In this document: piece by piece, positions 421 to 9,333 of the stretch
Numbering within the stretch: position 1 is the stretch's first letter
Layout of the letters: each line of letters begins with the position of its first letter
Source: Euprymna scolopes
Lineage: Eukaryota
Strand: one strand, 5' to 3'
NCBI GenBank assembly: GCA_053919585.1
Contig: CM132827.1
Length of the DNA stretch: 64,000 bases
Made by a program: the position numbers and the translations under genes
Notes under the pieces: model-generated
What the model saw: only the letters and a program-made list of their open reading frames with translations
The model's database searches: none
What the model was told of the DNA's origin: nothing

Positions 421-1430
421 AACAGTTTTTCTTCTTACTTCAGTAAAGCTACACACAATGGTGCAATGCCATACAAATAAATTGTTGTTTAAAGAAAGAC
501 TTTGTTCTCCTTATTTAATTAACTTTTTTTTTTATTATTACATTTTCACCCCAAACAAGGCACATTGCCACTTTGATGTAGGGGGCTACTATTAGGGACA
601 CAGGCTACAGGGGTACTAGGTGGGGAGTTGGGCAGCGAGATGTCGGTTCACATTACACTTGAACTTCTGCATGTCAGTACAGTTGGGAAAGCAGGAACTG
701 GCAGGGAGTTCCAAAGTCTAGCGGTTCTGGGTAAGAAACTACTGGAGTAGAAGGCTCTCTTACATCTAGGGATCTCAACTGTGAAGAGGTGGGATTTTGC
801 TGCTTGTCAGAGGTATTTACATAGAAGGGGTACAAGTGCTTGCAGCTTGTCAGAACATTCACCATTATAGTACTTGTAGAATAGGTACAGGGATGTTACA
901 TTGCGTCGATGGGACAGAGGCTGAAGCTTGGATGATATTTCAGGACCTATTAGGTTGGCAACTCTCTTTTGAACCTTGTCTAGGAGTGAGAGACTAGTAG
1001 CAGATGCACTGGCCCAAATATGACAACAGTACTCCATACATGGGCGAATGGTGGCCTTATAGAGGTATAGGATACTTTCAGGCATCAGTAGCTTTCTAGC
1101 ACGGTAGAGAGAACCTACTTTTTTTGTAGCGGTCCTAGCAATGTTCTCAATGTAATTGTTCCAACTCATGTTTCCTGTGAACGTTAGGCCGAGGAGTTTA
1201 AAAGATGTGCTTTCAGATAAAGAGTCTTTGGCCATTGCTATTGGTGGTAGAGAAGGTTTCTTGTAGTTATTGAAGGAAACCATTGAATGTGACCATCCAT
1301 TTTTGTCTCGATTCCACTACAGATTATTATAATTTATACAAAGATTAGTTCCTATACCTTTGCCAGGTGTGCTACGTATCTATTAACTACTTTTCGACCA
1401 AAAACATAAAGTGTGGCAGAGATGATTTCA
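421..1430. repeat. Unclassified repeat X, split by a LINE insertion (421-525 and 1318-1430)
   Basis: Both halves align colinearly to the uninterrupted copy at 3121-3340 (ggtgcaatgcc.tacaaataaattgttgttta ... aatttatacaaagattagttc.tatacctttgccaggtgtgct). Confidence 0.85.
524..1317 (-). mobile_element. 5'-truncated non-LTR retrotransposon, family A (CR1/L2 group), RT C-terminal region plus 3' UTR
   Basis: ORF 807-1283 has the KLLGLTF...SWN.YI and LYKATIRPCMEYCCHIW...LDKVQKR...LQPLSHRRNV motifs typical of LINE RT C-termini. T-rich tail at 524-540. The reading frame is disrupted. Confidence 0.9.
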
Positions 1431-1439
1431 AGTCCAAAC

Positions 1440-1530
1440 AATGAAGTCAATAACAATTAAATGAGAGTCATTCGGATGTAAGCATGACACACAAAATAAA
1501 TAACACACATGCAATCCTATTAATATAGAG

Positions 1531-1531
<1 letters not shown>
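1440..1531 (-). mobile_element. Helitron-like 5' terminus fragment
   Basis: Minus strand reads A|TCTCTATATTAATAGGATTGCATGTGTG. A second copy lies at 340-418. Confidence 0.45.

Positions 1532-1574
<43 letters not shown>
1531..1574. repeat. (ATT)n microsatellite
   Basis: Perfect ATT run. Confidence 0.98.
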
Positions 1575-1575
1575 G

Positions 1576-2256
1576 CCTATATATATAAAATGAACTCATT
1601 TTTCCCCCTCTGATTTTGATCTTAATAGGATTAAAAATCAAGACATTTCATGCAAATGTAATATGCACAAATTGCAGCACAATATCTGAGGGGTGTTATA
1701 GGCCTATTACCTCTCCACTTCCTTGATAATCGTAGATTCCTATATTTTTTCTGTTGAGAGTTCACTGCCAAAATCGGTTAAAAATCAATGGAGGTAGTAA
1801 AATCTTTTCTCTATAATAAATTCCTCCTTCCCTCGCCATCACTTTACACCATTGCAGGATCGTCCACAAGGGACAGTTATGAAAGAACACCGGTTTGGGG
1901 TTTCTTTACGTTGTAGTTGCTTAAAAAACCTGGAATGGACTTAACTGATTCGAAGGGTTATTTATGCCATTTTTTTTTTCTTTACTTTTTGCTGTGTTTT
2001 TTTGTTTTAGTTGTTCCGAACACGTTCATCATTTTTTCCTCTTTTGTTTTTCCGATTTCTTTTTTAAAGAAGTTTTATGTTTGTTCGCTGTTTTTGTTGG
2101 GTTTTCATTTCGCCGATTTTGTACAGAAGTTTACCATCGTTTTTTTATTTTTTTTTATTTAAACAGGGTTATTTACTTCGCTTTTTCTTTACTTTAACCC
2201 CTCCCCCTTACACACACACCTCCAAACAACCGGGCAACGCCGGGTACCCCCGCTAG
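1576..2256 (+). mobile_element. Non-autonomous Helitron-like element
   Basis: 3' end has the GC hairpin CCGGGCAACGCCGGG (2230-2244) followed by CTAG|T at 2253-2257. 5' end CCTATATATATAAAATGAA resembles a mutated TC-start terminus. No TSD seen. Confidence 0.7.
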
Positions 2257-2529
2257 TTATCAAATAATAATAAAATCTGGCTGATCACTCATATCATAAG
2301 TCACTTGAAGATGAACTGTTCCAGGAAAAAACTTTTTGGTGGCCAACATCTAGTAACTTTAATTCCTTTTAATTAAAGAAATTTTAAAATTTTATTTATT
2401 AATTTTTTGAAATGGAGTTGATGTCCAACCCCTATCGATTACCTTCTGTAACGCTAGTGACAATCATCAAACGATACATTACATTGACTAAAATATTAAT
2501 AACCTTCAATTAATCTATCTATTAATCTA

Positions 2530-3026
2530 TCTCCCTCTATTTTTCAGCGACGCGTTTACAATTTCATAGTGATCAAAACTTGATTCTTTACATTATGACC
2601 TTGAAAACATTGCGAACCCGTCTCTGCACTATCGTTGTTTTCATGGCGTTTGTATGAGCTTCAATCTATGTTCCCCGTCGTCAAACTTTCACAAAAAACA
2701 CTCGACTAGCAACAACCATTATTAACAATTCCCCCACTCTCTATCTGTGCCTAAATCTAAATGCAGATTCCATGAACAAAACTTTTTTCCTAGAACTGCC
2801 TGCCTGTGGAACTCTGTTCCACTTTCCGGCTGACTACAATATGGTCGTCTTCAAGTCCAGTGTAAACAAGTTCTTATTGAACCGGCCCCTTAAATTATCA
2901 AATTATACCTAATTTCAACAACGATTACTATGCTGTGTTCTGCAGTAACCACCATACACTCATTAACCCTCATCCTTGAGTGTCCTTCAGGCTTTGATAA
3001 GTAATGACTCCCCCGTGAAAAAAAAA
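2530..3026 (+). mobile_element. 5'-truncated LINE, family B 3' end
   Basis: Decayed frame reads NFFPRTACLWNS...FPADYNMVVFKSSVNKFLL, followed by a 3' UTR and A-tail at 3018-3026. Matches the reverse complement of 9334-9581. Confidence 0.8.
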
Positions 3027-3120
3027 TGAATAATTCAAATGGGTCAGACAGCTTAGTGCATAAGGCCACTGTTTTGGGGGGGGGGACATTTCGTCCAACT
3101 CGATAGCATTATGAATCATG

Positions 3121-3340
3121 ACATTTTTCCTTCTTACTTCAAGCAACCTACACTCAACGGTGCAATGCCGTACAAATAAATTGTTGTTTATAGAAGACCT
3201 TTGTTCTCCTTCATTTAATGAACTTTTTACCGATTCTTGTAATTTATACAAAGATTAGTTCATATACCTTTGCCAGGTGTGCTGTGTATCCATTAACTAC
3301 TTTTCAACCAAGAAACATGAACTGTGGTAGAGATAATTCT
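3121..3340. repeat. Unclassified repeat X, intact copy
   Basis: Matches 421-525 joined to 1318-1430. Confidence 0.85.
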
Positions 3341-3601
3341 CTTCATATACTGCTATTTCTATGGAGCTTATACCGAGTACCCTCCACAAAATGCCACCCA
3401 CGTGATCATTAATAAAATTCACAATCTTTTCTGTAATAATATTTAATACAAATAAACTTGTCAGTACCTGACTTGTCCATAAAGTTTGAGTCAAGCATGT
3501 TCAACAGTCTTCATTTTATTGCCCTTTAATGATTTTGTGGTCATTTTAGTGATCGATTCATCAGAAGCAGATGTGATTTTTATTTACATTAATCTAGAAC
3601 T

Positions 3602-4713
3602 GGCCCCCGCCCTGTGCGGCCCGGGCGACAAGATCAAAGTGTAGTATCTGTTCCGGCAGATACTGCAAGCTATGACTAGCTAGGACTAGCTATGACTAGC
3701 AAAGACCAGATGTGGGGGCAACCCCACATGCCTGACCTTTAACCAGCTCCCACTTCCCACCTCTCGGGAGCTGGTCCCCTTTTTCCCTTCCCCCTCCCTT
3801 CACTCCTCACATTAAAAATCGGCCTTGTGCCTAATTTGCTCAGTGGGGGAGCAAATAAATACCATCTGTTCCGGCAGATACTGCAAGCTATGACTAGCTA
3901 TGACTAGCAAAGACCAGATGTGGGGGCAAACCCACATGCCTGACCTTTAACCAGCTCCCATTTCCCACCTCTCGGGAGCTGGTCCCCATTTTCCCTTCCC
4001 CCTTCCTTCACTCCTCACATTAAAAATCGGCCTTGTGCCTAATTTGCTCGGTGGGGGAGCAAATAAATACCATCTGTTCCGACAGATACTGCAAGCAAAG
4101 ACCATATGTGGGGGCGACCCCACATATAAGACCTTGGTCAATGTAGGGGCAACCCTTCATACCAATTGTCACTATCCAGCTCCCCTACTCCCCGGGGAGC
4201 TGGGTCCCATTTCCCCTTCACTCCTCACATTAAAAATCGGCCTTGTGCCTAATTTGCTCGGTGGGGGAGCAAATAAATACCATCTGTTCCGACAGATACT
4301 GCAAGCAAAGACCATATGTGGGGGTAACCCCACATATCAGACCTTGGTCAATGTAGGGATCACCCTACAGACCAAAAGTTACTATCCAGTTCCAATTTCC
4401 CACCTCTCGGGAGCTGGTCCCCTTTTCCCTCCCCCCTCCCTCTCTCTCCACATTAAAAAATGGCCTTGTGCCTAATTTGCTCAGTGGGGAAGCAAATAAA
4501 TAACACTGCAAGCAAAGACCATATGTGGAGGTAACCCCACATATCAGACCTTGGTCAATGTAGGGATCACCCTACAGACCAAAAGTTACTATCCAGCTCC
4601 CATTTCCCACCCATTGGGAGCTGGTCCCCTTTTCCCTCCCCCCTCCCTCTCTCTCTCCACATTAAAAAACGGCCTTGTGCCTAATTTGCTCAGTGGGGAA
4701 GCAAATAAATATA
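3602..4713 (+). mobile_element. Non-coding retroposon-like insertion of five ~210-bp hairpin-rich tandem units, 17-bp TSD
   Basis: TACATTAATCTAGAACT occurs at 3585-3601 and 4714-4730. Units start at about 3646, 3864, 4072, 4282 and 4505, and each ends GGCCTTGTGCCTAATTTGCTC.GTGGGG.AGCAAATAAAT. Confidence 0.8.
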
Positions 4714-4744
4714 TACATTAATCTAGAACTTATTGCTTCTCAGA

Positions 4745-5267
4745 CATAAGGGACTACTGTTTATTAGCAGCCATATTTATAGAGGCATGATAATTGGGGA
4801 GTTGTGCAGCATGATATTTGTTCACATTACATTTAAATTGCTGCATGTCTGTACAATCAGAACAAAAAAGAGCAAGGAGGGTTTTCCAAAGACAATCCAT
4901 TTGTGAAAAGTTGTTATTAGTGTAAAACCTTGATAGGGAAGAAGGGGTAATTTTGCTGCTTGTCAGGTGGTCGGAAGTATTTATCTTGAGGAGGCATAAT
5001 GCAGCACGTTTGTTAGAACATATTACATTGAGTTATTTGTAAAACAAGTACAAGGATGCAATATTGTGGCAATGAAGCAGAGGCAAGAGCTTGGCAGACA
5101 GTGTGTGATCTATTAAATTAGATGCTCTTTTTTTTTCTTTTTTTTGGGGAGGCATATCTAGGAGAGAGAGGAAGAAAGGATAGTGGTTGGTACACCAGCC
5201 CAGATGTAATAACAATACTCCATGCCTGGGAAAATGGTGGCTTTGTCCAGATATATTTGCCAGGATA
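4745..5267 (-). mobile_element. Old decayed LINE family A fragment
   Basis: Colinear with 590-1075 (gttcacattac, ttttgctgcttgtcag, aacaatactccatg). Translated remnant LLPLLHCHNIASLYLFYK. Confidence 0.8.
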
Positions 5268-7425: not shown

Positions 7426-7834
7426 AGGAATTTTTTTTTTGTTTGTTTTTAGTTTTGTAGAGCATGATTGTTGTATTTTTTACAAATAATCTTTTTTTTT
7501 AAGGAAATAAATAACATTAAAGTTTGGTGCATTTAAGCCAGGAAGCTGATATCTTCAGACCAAAAAGATGGTTTGAAGTTAAATTTTATTGAGGAGTTCT
7601 ATTTCTTTAATGAAATTTTAGATATGTGTTTTTGAACAGGTACTTTACACTATTTGAATTATATTGTTTTTTCTTTGTCAGAGATTATTACAGTGCATTA
7701 TTATATGTTTAACTGTCTGTGATTTTTTGACATGAAATAACCACTGGAGACTCTTTACCATTCAGTAAATGCAAGGTGAAGAGAGGATCATGTTAGAGCT
7801 ATTGAGAATTTTGCACATCATATCCAGATGTGCC

Positions 7835-8670
7835 TTTTGTTTTTATTGTTACTCTTGTTCTCCCAGACAAGGCATATTGCCACTGCGACTATGTCTACAG
7901 AAGACTATGTAAGGAGATGAACAAGATCATTATTTAAACTTCTGCACTGGTGTTACCAGATCAGGCTGTCTGAAAATGTTGGCTTCCTAAGATGAAATGT
8001 ACCTAACATTGATGTTTTTTTTTTATTTTTCTACTTCATTTTGCAAAACTTAATTGTATTCTGTAAAACCGAAAACAAAAACCACTTTCCACCTTTTCTT
8101 TCTTCCCATTTCCCCTTTTCTCTTTCTATCCCCCCCCACACTTCCTGACTGGTTTCCTAACTTAAAATGTACTAAACATTAATACTGTAACCCTTTTCCC
8201 ATTGCAAAACTCGTTCATGTTCTGCAGGGCAGGGAACAAAAACAATAAAATCCACTATAAAACAACCAAACCAAACACTACAAACTAACAATTGAAGATA
8301 CAAAGAGCTTGAAGAATAAAAACCTTCTTCAAAATAACTGGATGCAACATGAATACTATTTCCAAAATGACTGGATTCAGCATTAAATAACCCGAAAAGG
8401 GTTGATATGCCATAAAACAAGCAAACCAAATCAAACTTCTGCATATTAGTACAGTCAGGGAAGTAGCAAGCAGGGAGGGAATTCCAAAGTATAGCAAGCT
8501 GATAGAAGAAATTGTTAGAGTAGAAAGCTTTCTGGCATTTAGGGACCTCAACAGTGAAGTGGTGGAATTTTGCTGCTTGTTGTGTTGTATGTATGTTGAG
8601 GGCGCGCATGTGCTATGAGTTCATCAGCACACATTCCATTAAAGTACTTGTAAAACAGACACAGAGATGT
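7835..8670 (-). mobile_element. LINE family A 3' end (7835-7946 and 8433-8670), split by a SINE-like insertion
   Basis: caaggcatattgccact 3' UTR motif. Translated SLCLFYKYFNGMCADEL and EVPKCQKAFYSNNFF...LWNSLPACYFPDCTNMQKF. Confidence 0.85.
7947..8432 (+). mobile_element. SINE-like retroposon, 486 bp
   Basis: 11-bp TSD AAACTTCTGCA at 7936-7946 and 8433-8443. Ends with ggattcagcattaaataacccgaaaagggttgatatgccataaaac plus a CAAAC-type tail, the same tail as the 5988 and 10584 elements. Confidence 0.8.
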
Positions 8671-9126
8671 AATATTGTAATATTGTAATATTGTAACATT
8701 GTAATATTGTAATATTGTAACATTGTAATATTGCAATATTGTAATATTGTAATATTGTAACATTGTAATATTGTAATATTGTAATATTGTAACATTGTAA
8801 TATTGTAACATTGTAATATTGTAATATTGTAATATTGTAACATTGTAACATTGTAATATTGTAATATTGTAACATTGTAATATTGTAACATTGTAATATT
8901 GTAATATTGTAATATTGCAATATTGTAATATTATAACATTGTAATATTGTAATATTGTAACATTGTAATATTGTAATATTGTAACATTGTAATATTGTAA
9001 TATTGTAACATTGTAATATTGTAATATTGTAACATTGTAATATTGTAATATTGTAACATTGTAATATTGTAATATTGTAATATTACAATATTGTAATATT
9101 GTAATATTACAATATTGTAATATTGT
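8668..9126. repeat. 8-bp tandem repeat (TAATATTG/TAACATTG)n, about 57 units
   Basis: Read directly from the sequence. Confidence 0.97.
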
Positions 9127-9333
9127 ATCCGGTACCTTTACAAGGCCACCATTCATCCATGCATGGAGTATTGTTGCCACATCTGGGCTGGTGCATCTAC
9201 CACTAGTCTCTTCATCTTTGATAAAGTCCAAAAAAGAGTTGTCAATCTAATCGGTCCCACTTTATCAACTAAGCTCCAGCCCCGGTCCCATCACTGCAAT
9301 GTTGCATCACTGTGCCTGTTGTACAAATATTTT

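What the first reader, a model, noticed from the sequence alone, without database searches (positions are those of the whole stretch)
3585..4730. TSD-flanked concatemer of five ~210-nt structured units with GNRA/UNCG tetraloops: retrozyme-like architecture without a recognisable ribozyme
Seen: a perfect 17-bp direct repeat flanks a 1112-bp insert made of a short GC-rich leader and five units, each ending in AATAAAT. Each unit is a string of hairpins. (1) GTAGTATCTGT-TCCG-GCAGATACTGC at 3641-3666 has a UNCG loop, and its closing U.G pair becomes U-A in units 3-4. (2) ATGTGGGG-loop-CCCCACAT has loops GCAA, GCAA, GCGA, GTAA, GTAA, which are always GNRA. (3) CCAGCTCCC...GGGAGCTGG keeps its stem while the loop changes completely. 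(4) ATTTGCTC...GAGCAAAT. (5) Units 3-5 add TGTAGGG-ATCA/GCAA-CCCT.CA. Known: long TSDs mark target-primed reverse transcription, and animal non-LTR retrozymes are TSD-flanked tandem units of a few hundred nt carrying hammerheads. I find no CUGANGA/GAAA core on either strand. Inference: a non-autonomous structured-RNA retroelement whose + strand fold is conserved, possibly with an uncharacterised self-cleaving or RT-recruiting motif. The units are diverged (two subtypes), so this is not a fresh rolling-circle copy of one monomer. It could instead be the repeated 3' UTR of a LINE or Penelope partner.
Basis: partly seen in the sequence, partly recalled or inferred. Interest (0 to 1): 0.75.

Follow-up and report, generated by a model that had tools for sequence, protein, structure and literature searches.

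The report
ORF-less LINE derivative with monomer array
The flagged 1.1-kb insert is a gene-less short version of a young jumping gene (an L1-like LINE) of this mollusc genome, built from that LINE's own head and repeated copies of its folded tail; it is an ordinary kind of mobile element and carries no detectable ribozyme.

Summary
A perfect 17-bp target-site duplication (3585-3601 / 4714-4730) flanks a 1112-bp insert made of a 44-nt GC-rich leader and five hairpin-rich units of about 210 nt.

The retrozyme reading does not hold. No ribozyme family matches at E<=10, and neither strand has a CUGANGA core.

A full-length 7.8-kb LINE elsewhere in the genome (L063) starts with the same leader plus one such unit. 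It encodes a CCHC ORF1, an APE endonuclease and an RT closest to L1 ORF2p. It ends in a u4-type unit with the same ...GCAAATAAATA+CA terminus and its own TSD. Forty of the 40 best LINE 5'UTR copies are preceded by a unit, and 40 of 40 3'UTR copies end in one.

The window element is therefore leader, 5'UTR monomers and the LINE 3' terminal unit, with no ORFs. At least five such short copies have independent 15-18-bp TSDs, and two share an odd internal joint. This favours retrotransposition of a short RNA by the LINE machinery; collapse of a full-length copy after insertion remains possible.

The family is transcribed in polyA RNA-seq, but this copy shows no read-through and no cleavage-like read ends. 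This is a new member of a known kind.

The parts
3585..3601 (+). Left copy of the 17-bp target-site duplication (TACATTAATCTAGAACT). Its last three bases, ACT, coincide with the conserved first bases of the element (ACTGGCC...) seen in other copies.
3602..3645 (+). 44-nt GC-rich leader, which is the 5' end of the LINE family. It holds a CCCCCGCCC GC-box-like motif (3604-3612). It ends in GATCAAAGTGTAGT, a stretch that also precedes the terminal unit in the LINE 3'UTR.
   Evidence: It is 98% identical to L063 46-89 at the 5' end of a full-length LINE. There are at least 913 candidate copies, and the top 40 are 96-100% identical.
3646..3863 (+). Unit u1 (218 nt), a 5'UTR-monomer type with a 10-nt internal (AGCTATGACT-like) triplication.
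   Evidence: The same type follows the leader in the full-length LINE at L063 90-306 (98%).
3864..4071 (+). Unit u2 (208 nt), the commonest monomer type in the genome sample.
   Evidence: cluster of 114 distinct units
4072..4281 (+). Unit u3 (210 nt), a second monomer type with an extra TGTAGGGG-CAAC-CCTTCA hairpin.
   Evidence: cluster of 60 distinct units
4282..4504 (+). Unit u4 (223 nt), of the LINE 3'-terminal-unit type, with a C/T-rich tract.
   Evidence: It is 88% identical to L063 7634-7853, the last unit of the full-length LINE.
4505..4713 (+). Unit u5 (209 nt), of terminal-unit type and lacking the first 16 nt of a unit. It carries the element's 3' end: stem-loop ATTTGCT(4684-4690)/AGCAAAT(4700-4706) with loop CAGTGGGGA, AATAAA at 4704-4709, and a tail ending ...AAATA+TA.
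   Evidence: The same odd u4|u5 joint occurs in an independent copy, L003. Other copies end GCAAATAAATA+CA.
4714..4730 (+). Right copy of the 17-bp target-site duplication.
3641..3666 (+). Extended first hairpin (11-bp stem with two U.G pairs, loop UCCG). The full stem exists only where TCAAAGTGTAGT precedes a unit, i.e. after the leader and in the LINE 3'UTR. Internal units keep only the 6-bp ATCTGT/RCAGAT stem.

Best explanation
The insert is a non-autonomous, ORF-less member of a young L1-superfamily-like LINE family of this mollusc genome.

The autonomous LINE is about 7.8 kb. It has this layout: a short GC-rich leader; one or more ~210-nt 5'UTR 'monomers'; a unique 5'UTR; ORF1 with a CCHC knuckle; ORF2 with APE endonuclease, RT and a zinc-finger part; a 3'UTR; and one terminal ~220-nt unit that is a paralogue of the 5' monomers and ends in a stem-loop plus ...GCAAATAAATA(CA).

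The window element keeps only the leader, four monomers and the terminal unit.

Shown: it shares both ends with the LINE, it has a 17-bp TSD, and sister short copies have other TSDs.

Inferred: a short RNA, transcribed from a master copy starting at ACTGG..., was recognised through its terminal unit by the LINE's ORF2 protein in trans. It was then copied into a nicked AT-rich target by target-primed reverse transcription.

Inferred roles of the hairpins: the last stem-loop and tail serve as the RT entry site. The tandem 5' copies act like mouse-L1 monomers (promoter or stability modules). The number of units changes easily by unequal exchange or template jumps.
For: 1. Parent LINE. L063 holds the leader (98%) and a u1-type unit (98%) at 46-306, and a u4-type unit at 7634-7853 that ends GCAAATAAATA+CA followed by a TSD. 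Between them lie a CCHC knuckle, Exo_endo_phos (E 2e-8), RVT_1 (E 8e-30) and zf-RVT. The RT is nearest to human L1 ORF2p (E 3e-46, against 3e-23 for R2), and so is the APE.

2. The units belong to the LINE. 40 of the 40 best hits of L063:46-470 have a unit contiguous with the unique 5'UTR, and many have a further unit upstream. 40 of 40 hits of L063:7440-7853 have the 3'UTR contiguous with one terminal unit. The family is large and young: at least 1682 5'UTR candidates at 96-97% identity and at least 448 3'UTR candidates at 97-100%.

3. Independent short insertions. The window copy has a 17-bp TSD, L003 17 bp, L028 about 17 bp (diverged), L056 15 bp and L058 16 bp. All start (N2-3)ACTGGCC... 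and end ...AAATAAATA+CA or TA.

4. Shared architecture. The window copy, L003 and L028 have the same order leader-u2-u3-u4. The window copy and L003 also share the unusual u4|u5 joint that lacks 16 nt. Among about 8 independent leader-bearing insertions of this leader subtype, none is full-length.

5. No coding capacity. The only ORFs (146 and 64 aa) have no Pfam match. No tRNA is found.

6. Expression. PolyA RNA-seq raw reads cover the units at depths of roughly 3-420 per bin (highest over the leader and the first four units, lowest over u5). The flanks 3502-3603 and 4726-4776 have about zero depth.

7. Structure. + strand z-scores are -2.0 to -4.7. 205 of 229 H2 loops are GNRA, in four variants. 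There are G-C/G.U/A-U series in H3 and a G-C<->A-U change in the GGC/GCC tail hairpin between two tail families.
Against: - The same insertion, with identical flanks and an 18-bp TSD inside a dispersed repeat, exists both as the full-length LINE (L052/L063) and as collapsed leader+units+terminal-unit forms (L032-L057). DNA-level collapse or array remodelling therefore does happen. It could have produced the window copy after a full-length insertion.
The count of independent short versus full-length copies rests on about 8 loci.
- No read evidence pins a transcription start at the leader or shows a discrete short RNA.
- Hairpin covariation is modest. G.U and A.C counts in the stems are similar overall, and the LINE's own terminal units often break the outer H3 stem.
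- The promoter and RT-recognition roles are untested.
- The clade assignment (L1/Tx1-like) rests only on PDB and Atlas similarity.
Confidence: 0.6

Rival explanations
1. Same LINE family, different route. A full-length (or long) LINE was inserted here by TPRT, which gave the 17-bp TSD. It later lost its about 7 kb of interior by unequal homologous recombination or replication slippage between a 5'UTR monomer and the homologous 3' terminal unit, as in solo-LTR formation.
For: One and the same insertion site in a dispersed PIF1-fragment-bearing repeat is occupied by the full LINE in L052/L063 and by collapsed forms with 2-7 units in about 25 other copies. The 5' and 3' units are direct repeats with a near-identical 58-nt tail module. 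Unit numbers clearly change at the DNA level.
Against: The window copy and L003 have independent TSDs yet share the same unit order and the same rare 16-nt-deleted u4|u5 joint. L028 shares the order as well. Typical LINE 3' ends carry a single terminal unit (39 of the 40 best hits; one has a second unit just downstream), so a u3-u4-u5 end is not the usual LINE 3' end. None of about 8 independent insertions with this leader subtype is full-length.
Confidence: 0.25
2. One reading: a retrozyme-like element whose ~210-nt units carry a new, unrecognised self-cleaving (or otherwise catalytic) RNA motif and give small circular RNAs that are reverse-transcribed.
For: The units are tandem, ~210 nt, hairpin-rich and flanked by a long TSD. 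GNRA and UNCG-type loops are kept across unit variants. + strand folding z-scores reach -4.7. A highly conserved ~80-nt block spans each unit joint.
Against: No ribozyme family matches at E<=10 in 3300-5000, or at E<=1 in the whole LINE locus. There is no CUGANGA on either strand. Unverified notes of this scan say the same genome holds hammerhead retrozymes, which, if right, suggests hammerheads are detectable in this genome (not checked here). The conserved block is fully explained as the LINE's 3' end plus the unit start. The units differ within the array. Reads show no unit-periodic begin or end sites; the few 'begin' sites (4006, 4014, 3776) lie where reads from other unit variants start to match. 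The partner is an APE LINE, not a Penelope-like element.
Confidence: 0.04
3. A DNA-level origin: a piece of satellite DNA carried by a Helitron or other DNA transposon, or reintegrated from extrachromosomal circles. The flanking repeat would then be chance or come from microhomology repair.
For: The units also form arrays of more than 4 kb at many loci. Most leader-bearing copies sit in a dispersed repeat that encodes a PIF1-like helicase fragment (E 4e-38), a domain typical of Helitrons.
Against: Independent copies have precise, constant ends and different 15-18-bp TSDs. Helitrons do not make TSDs (established knowledge). The copies in the PIF1-bearing repeat are themselves flanked by an 18-bp TSD, so they are an insertion into it. 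No Rep domain was found beside them. The long arrays examined likewise start with leader variants and end in a terminal unit followed by unique flanks.
Confidence: 0.03

Closest known systems
Mouse/rat L1 5'UTR monomers (A, Tf, Gf types) (own knowledge)
   Same: A LINE of the L1 superfamily whose 5'UTR is a variable-number tandem array of ~200-bp units upstream of a unique region and ORF1. Full-length copies differ in monomer number.
   Different: Here the monomers are paralogues of the element's own 3'-terminal unit and each carries the 3'-end stem-loop and an AATAAA. Promoter activity is not tested. The arrays reach at least 17 units and also occur in ORF-less elements.
ORF-less internal-deletion derivatives of LINEs, e.g. 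RIME (from ingi) and NARTc (from L1Tc) in trypanosomes (own knowledge)
   Same: A short non-autonomous element made of the 5' end and the 3' end of its autonomous LINE, TSD-flanked, and presumably mobilised in trans.
   Different: This one contains a variable tandem array between the ends, so it is VNTR-like, as in primate SVA. The two ends are themselves homologous repeats.
HeT-A / TART telomeric LINEs of Drosophila (PMC5537684)
   Same: Non-LTR elements in which 3'-end sequence also sits at or acts on the 5' side: the HeT-A 3' promoter drives the downstream copy, and TART has repeats in both UTRs. This gives an LTR-like logic. Head-to-tail tandems occur here too (L045, L016).
   Different: It is not telomere-specific and is dispersed with 15-18-bp TSDs. 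It belongs to a different clade (L1-like by RT similarity). Promoter function of the unit is not shown.
Animal non-LTR retrozymes (PMC7229834; bioRxiv 10.64898/2026.07.22.740005)
   Same: Tandem 170-400-nt non-coding units, sometimes TSD-flanked and transcribed. They are derived from the terminal repeat of an autonomous retroelement (the pLTR of Penelope-like elements), as this element derives from the LINE's terminal unit.
   Different: Retrozymes are defined by a type I hammerhead in each unit and by circular RNAs. Here no hammerhead or any known ribozyme is present, and the parent is an APE-type LINE.

Membership tests
Non-LTR retrozyme | A type I hammerhead ribozyme in every unit (PMC7229834) | tested here: not met
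   The Rfam scan at E<=10 gives no ribozyme hit. There is no CTGANGA on either strand.
Non-LTR retrozyme | Tandem non-coding units of about 170-400 nt, with TSDs longer than 4 bp when present | tested here: met
   Five units of 208-223 nt and a 17-bp TSD.
Non-LTR retrozyme | Expressed as monomeric linear and circular RNAs | tested here: inconclusive
   PolyA RNA-seq covers the family, but there are no unit-periodic read ends. In a tandem array, circle junctions cannot be told from unit joints, and polyA libraries would miss circles.
Non-LTR retrozyme | Related to the pLTR of Penelope-like elements (bioRxiv 10.64898/2026.07.22.740005) | tested here: not met
   The units are shared with an APE+RVT_1 LINE closest to L1 ORF2p.
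LINE-derived ORF-less non-autonomous element (RIME-type / monomer-bearing) | The 5' end and 3' end are identical to those of an autonomous LINE in the same genome | tested here: met
   The leader is 98% and the first unit 98% identical to L063 46-306. The terminal unit is 88% identical to L063 7634-7853, with the same GCAAATAAATA terminus.
LINE-derived ORF-less non-autonomous element (RIME-type / monomer-bearing) | The partner encodes endonuclease and reverse transcriptase, and the family is recently active | tested here: met
   Exo_endo_phos, RVT_1, zf-RVT and a CCHC ORF1 are present. Hundreds of copies are 96-100% identical. The one full copy examined (L063) is itself broken: it has an in-frame stop between APE and RT and a frame change before the zinc-finger part.
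LINE-derived ORF-less non-autonomous element (RIME-type / monomer-bearing) | No coding capacity of its own | tested here: met
   There are only two ORFs (146 and 64 aa), with no Pfam match at E<=0.1.
LINE-derived ORF-less non-autonomous element (RIME-type / monomer-bearing) | Several independent insertions with different TSDs and constant ends | tested here: met
   The window copy, L003, L028, L056 and L058.
LINE-derived ORF-less non-autonomous element (RIME-type / monomer-bearing) | Mobilised in trans as a short RNA | not testable with these tools
   Only indirect support is available: shared derived architecture. It needs long-read RNA data and a retrotransposition assay.
Helitron / Helitron-borne satellite | No TSD, insertion between A and T, 5' TC and 3' hairpin-CTRR termini | tested here: not met
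   15-18-bp TSDs and ends ACTGGCC... / ...AAATAAATACA. The PIF1 fragment belongs to a host repeat into which the LINE had inserted.
tRNA-, 5S- or 7SL-derived SINE | A head derived from a small Pol III RNA gene | tested here: not met
   ARAGORN finds 0 genes. There is no Rfam hit.

The most novel reading that the evidence does not exclude
The ~210-nt folded module is a dual-use terminal module of an L1-like LINE. As the last unit it recruits the reverse transcriptase. As tandem 5' copies it supplies the promoter, following a pseudo-LTR logic like that of HeT-A.

New copies of the module would be added by template jumps of the RT between RNAs. The LINE, its ORF-less VNTR-type derivatives and the kilobase-long 'satellite' arrays of the same units would then all grow by an RNA-mediated mechanism rather than by DNA recombination.
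Probability: 0.2. Interest if true: 0.55.

Novelty: new member of a known kind. Interest (0 to 1): 0.3.

Why it matters
The result removes a candidate 'new ribozyme retroelement' and replaces it with a documented parent-derivative pair: a young, abundant L1-like LINE of a mollusc and its ORF-less, variable-unit derivative.

The one feature of wider interest is that the LINE's 5' monomers are copies of its own structured 3' end. The same units also build long arrays. This makes the family a convenient natural system for three questions: how LINE 5' monomer arrays arise, whether a 3' RT-recognition module can double as a promoter, and how LINE fragments seed satellite-like DNA.

For genome annotation, it explains thousands of ~210-bp tandem units in this 5.9-Gb genome.

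Tried and rejected
- Rfam at a permissive threshold on 3300-5000 and on the 10-kb LINE locus gave only chance hits (lincRNA-p21, snoZ188, isrG).
- tRNA scan: nothing found.
- One global MAFFT and RNAalifold run on 262 mixed units gave a poor alignment and almost no consensus structure, because the unit interiors are not homologous between subtypes. I switched to per-hairpin counts. My H5 pattern also caught H2 instances there, so I do not use the H5 numbers.
- Whole-element folding does not separate the strands: MFE is -387 for + and -428 for -. Only per-unit z-scores do so, and mildly.
- RNAalifold on two tail families gave a weak structure (-5.65 kcal/mol). The apparent compensatory changes in the terminal stem depend on how the 5-nt indel is placed, so I do not count them.
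- ORFs next to the element in the host repeat (L062) gave no Rep or other Pfam domain, so 'Helitron' for that host repeat remains unproven.
- The protein atlas gave only 'RVT_1' and a weak Tx1-like hint. I ran no further search on clade assignment.
- Literature searches for cephalopod or mollusc LINE-derived tandem arrays returned nothing specific. Two searches failed on term syntax.
- One regex script timed out.
- After no further genome loci could be cut out, so a genome-wide TSD census was not possible.
- RNA reads gave no transcription start, no discrete short RNA and no cleavage sites. 72-74% of the laid reads run on into other unit variants.
Full report
**What is there**

The window sequence shows TACATTAATCTAGAACT at 3585-3601 and again at 4714-4730, a 17/17 match. 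The 1112 bp between them (3602-4713) have GC 0.51 in flanks of GC 0.35-0.38. TRF reports periods of 207-210.

I place a 44-nt GC-rich leader at 3602-3645 and five units:
- u1 3646-3863
- u2 3864-4071
- u3 4072-4281
- u4 4282-4504
- u5 4505-4713

Each unit ends in GCAAATAAATA. u5 lacks the first 16 nt of a unit. u1 and u2 are 93% alike and u4 and u5 are 88% alike. Between subtypes identity is 72-82%.

**No ribozyme**

Rfam was searched on both strands of 3300-5000 at E<=10 and gave only two chance hits and no ribozyme family. The 10-kb locus of the parent element gave none at E<=1. Neither strand contains CTGANGA. No tRNA-like head is found. The two ORFs (146 and 64 aa) have no Pfam match.

**Copies elsewhere in the genome**

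The genome (G000) has 5.9 Gb. RNA runs that hold the sequence are labelled mollusc or invertebrate. The units occur at thousands of places: 4999 first-look candidates, which is a capped number.

In the 30 best loci the units form arrays of three to more than 17 units. These mix u1/u2-, u3- and u4-type units and a 183-194-nt variant that shares only the first ~22 nt and the last 58 nt.

The first 79 nt (leader plus unit start) have at least 913 candidates, and the best 40 are 96-100% identical. Leader-bearing copies have a common plan: leader, a variable number of internal units, and a u4/u5-type last unit ending GCAAATAAATA+CA.

Five copies have their own TSDs: the window copy (17 bp), L003 (17), L028 (about 17, diverged), L056 (15) and L058 (16). 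Their 5' ends read (2-3 extra nt)ACTGGCC.... This is the signature of target-primed reverse transcription with constant element ends.

**The parent LINE**

In one leader-bearing locus (L052, extended as L063) the leader and a single u1-type unit are followed by a unique sequence and then by genes, not by a terminal unit. These are:
- an ORF with a CCHC zinc knuckle
- an Exo_endo_phos endonuclease (E 2e-8)
- RVT_1 (E 8e-30)
- a zf-RVT piece

About 7.8 kb from its start the element ends with a 3'UTR, the words TCAAAGTGTAGT, a u4-type unit (L063 7634-7853), then GCAAATAAATA+CA and a TSD. TCAAAGTGTAGT is the same stretch that closes the leader.

The RT is far closer to human L1 ORF2p (E 3e-46) than to R2 proteins (E 3e-23), and the endonuclease also matches L1. 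The atlas gave a weak Tx1-like hint. I therefore call it L1-superfamily-like, without a firm clade.

This particular copy is broken. It has an in-frame stop between the endonuclease and RT parts and a frame change before the zinc-finger part.

The units are a regular part of this LINE:
- 40 of the 40 best hits of L063:46-470 have a unit contiguous with the unique 5'UTR. Many have another unit just upstream, and the leader variants differ.
- 40 of the 40 best hits of L063:7440-7853 have the 3'UTR contiguous with one terminal unit, after which the match ends.

The family is large and young. The 5'UTR has at least 1682 candidates at 96-97% identity, and the 3'UTR at least 448 at 97-100%.

**What the window element is**

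It is the LINE's leader, four 5'UTR-type monomers and the LINE's terminal-type unit, with everything in between missing. In kind it resembles the ORF-less 5'+3' derivatives of other LINEs (RIME/ingi type, own knowledge). Its 5' array resembles mouse L1 monomers (own knowledge).

The special point is that the 5' monomers are paralogues of the element's own 3' terminal unit. HeT-A/TART offer the nearest parallel to that arrangement (PMC5537684).

**How it got here**

There are two routes.

(a) A short RNA from a short master copy was reverse-transcribed by the LINE proteins in trans.

(b) A long LINE inserted here and later collapsed between its 5' and 3' units.

Route (b) certainly occurs somewhere. 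One insertion into a dispersed repeat that carries a PIF1-like helicase fragment (L061, E 4e-38) is found with identical flanks and an 18-bp TSD. It appears as the full LINE in L052/L063 and as collapsed forms with 2-7 units in about 25 other copies of that repeat.

For the window copy I favour route (a), for three reasons:
- The window copy, L003 and L028 have different TSDs but the same unit order. The window copy and L003 also share the rare u4|u5 joint lacking 16 nt (alignment A1).
- Typical LINE 3' ends have one unit, not u3-u4-u5.
- None of about eight independent insertions with this leader subtype is full-length.

The sample is small because no more loci could be fetched.

**RNA evidence**

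Two polyA RNA-seq runs kept as raw reads cover the units at depths of roughly 3-420 per bin, in both mate orientations. Depth is highest over the leader and the first four units and lowest over u5. Depth is about zero in the flanks 3502-3603 and 4726-4776.

Most reads are 95-99% rather than 99-100% alike, and 72-74% of them run on into other unit variants. The family is therefore transcribed, but this copy is not shown to be. It is not part of a read-through transcript.

There are no unit-periodic start or end piles. The few 'begin' sites (4006, 4014, 3776) lie where reads from the 183-nt variant start to match. The 'goes back' joints reflect other genomic arrangements, such as a unit followed by a leader-like piece or tandem elements, as in L045.

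**Is the fold real?**

Evidence for a conserved fold:
- Per unit, the + strand has z-scores of -2.0 to -4.7 against dinucleotide shuffles. The - strand has -0.5 to -3.0.
- Across 276 distinct units, the H2 loop is GNRA in 205 of 229 cases, with four variants (GCAA, GTAA, GCGA, GAAA). Non-GNRA loops are rare.
- H3 shows a G-C / G.U / A-U series at one pair.
- A small GGC/GCC hairpin in the tail changes to GAC/GTC in a second tail family.

Evidence against:
- G.U and A.C counts in the stems are similar overall.
- The LINE's own terminal units often break the outer part of H3.
- The compensatory changes I first saw in the terminal stem depend on the alignment.

I conclude that a + strand RNA fold is plausible, above all for the terminal stem-loop plus tail as the RT entry site. 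It is not proven. It does not point to catalysis.

**Other arrays**

The long arrays I could inspect also begin with leader variants (...GGCC-N-GGCC...GATCAAAGTGTAGT). They end in a different ~160-nt terminal unit with a diverged tail (...GTGGGGAGGCATAGTAAATAGGTACA), followed by unique flanks. They appear to be larger relatives of the same kind of element, perhaps served by a second LINE. I could not check this.

**Earlier notes of this scan**

Unchecked notes of this scan report genuine hammerhead retrozymes elsewhere in this genome. If they are right, retrozymes here are detectable with the same tools, which makes the negative result at this locus more meaningful.

**Verdict**

The thing is an ORF-less, monomer-bearing derivative of a young L1-like LINE. 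It is a new member of a known kind and of modest interest.

Noticed in passing
window 11598-64000: A single 36-bp satellite (unit TTTCTATCTCTCTACTAAAGTAATGTTGGATAATTA) with about 1450 copies, 97% matches and GC 0.26. It runs to the end of the window, 7 kb downstream of the element.
   Followed up: partly
window 8668-9127: (TGTAATAT)n array with 57 copies and 90% matches.
   Followed up: no
L061 8661-10000 (G000:C44:28519200-28529199), minus strand: A dispersed repeat (over 3 kb, about 95% identical between copies) encodes a PIF1-like helicase fragment (E 4e-38) but no detectable Rep domain. One LINE insertion into it, with an 18-bp TSD AACTGGGGGATATGTATA, is present as the full LINE in one copy and as collapsed 2-7-unit forms in about 25 others.
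   Followed up: partly
L021 2134-2295, L025 2136-2296, L007, L020, L024, L027: Long unit arrays end in a different ~160-nt terminal unit (starting ATCTGTTCTTCAGATGCTGCAC..., ending ...GTGGGGAGGCATAGTAAATAGGTACA) followed by unique flanks. This is probably the 3' end of a second, related LINE family. The partner was not found.
   Followed up: partly
L016 about 1000-3600; L045 1501-2826: Head-to-tail arrangements. In L016 a LINE 3'UTR runs straight into 12 units and then into the other terminal-unit type. In L045 two short elements lie in tandem, and the 5' end carries three partial leader repeats (ACTGGCCCCCGCCCTTTGC x3). These are possible traces of template jumps.
   Followed up: no
L063 7540-7572: The LINE 3'UTR holds a decayed second copy of the tail module (GGCCATGTGCCTAAGTTTTTTG, compared with GGCCTTGTGCCTAATTTGCTC) about 90 nt upstream of the terminal block. 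This hints at older unit copies in the 3'UTR.
   Followed up: no
window 3629 (loose ends of RNA reads): Many transcripts join ...GGCCACGTCCGTGGCCTTCGGGC to GACAAGATCAAAG... This is another leader variant with a perfect small hairpin, so several leader subtypes are expressed.
   Followed up: no
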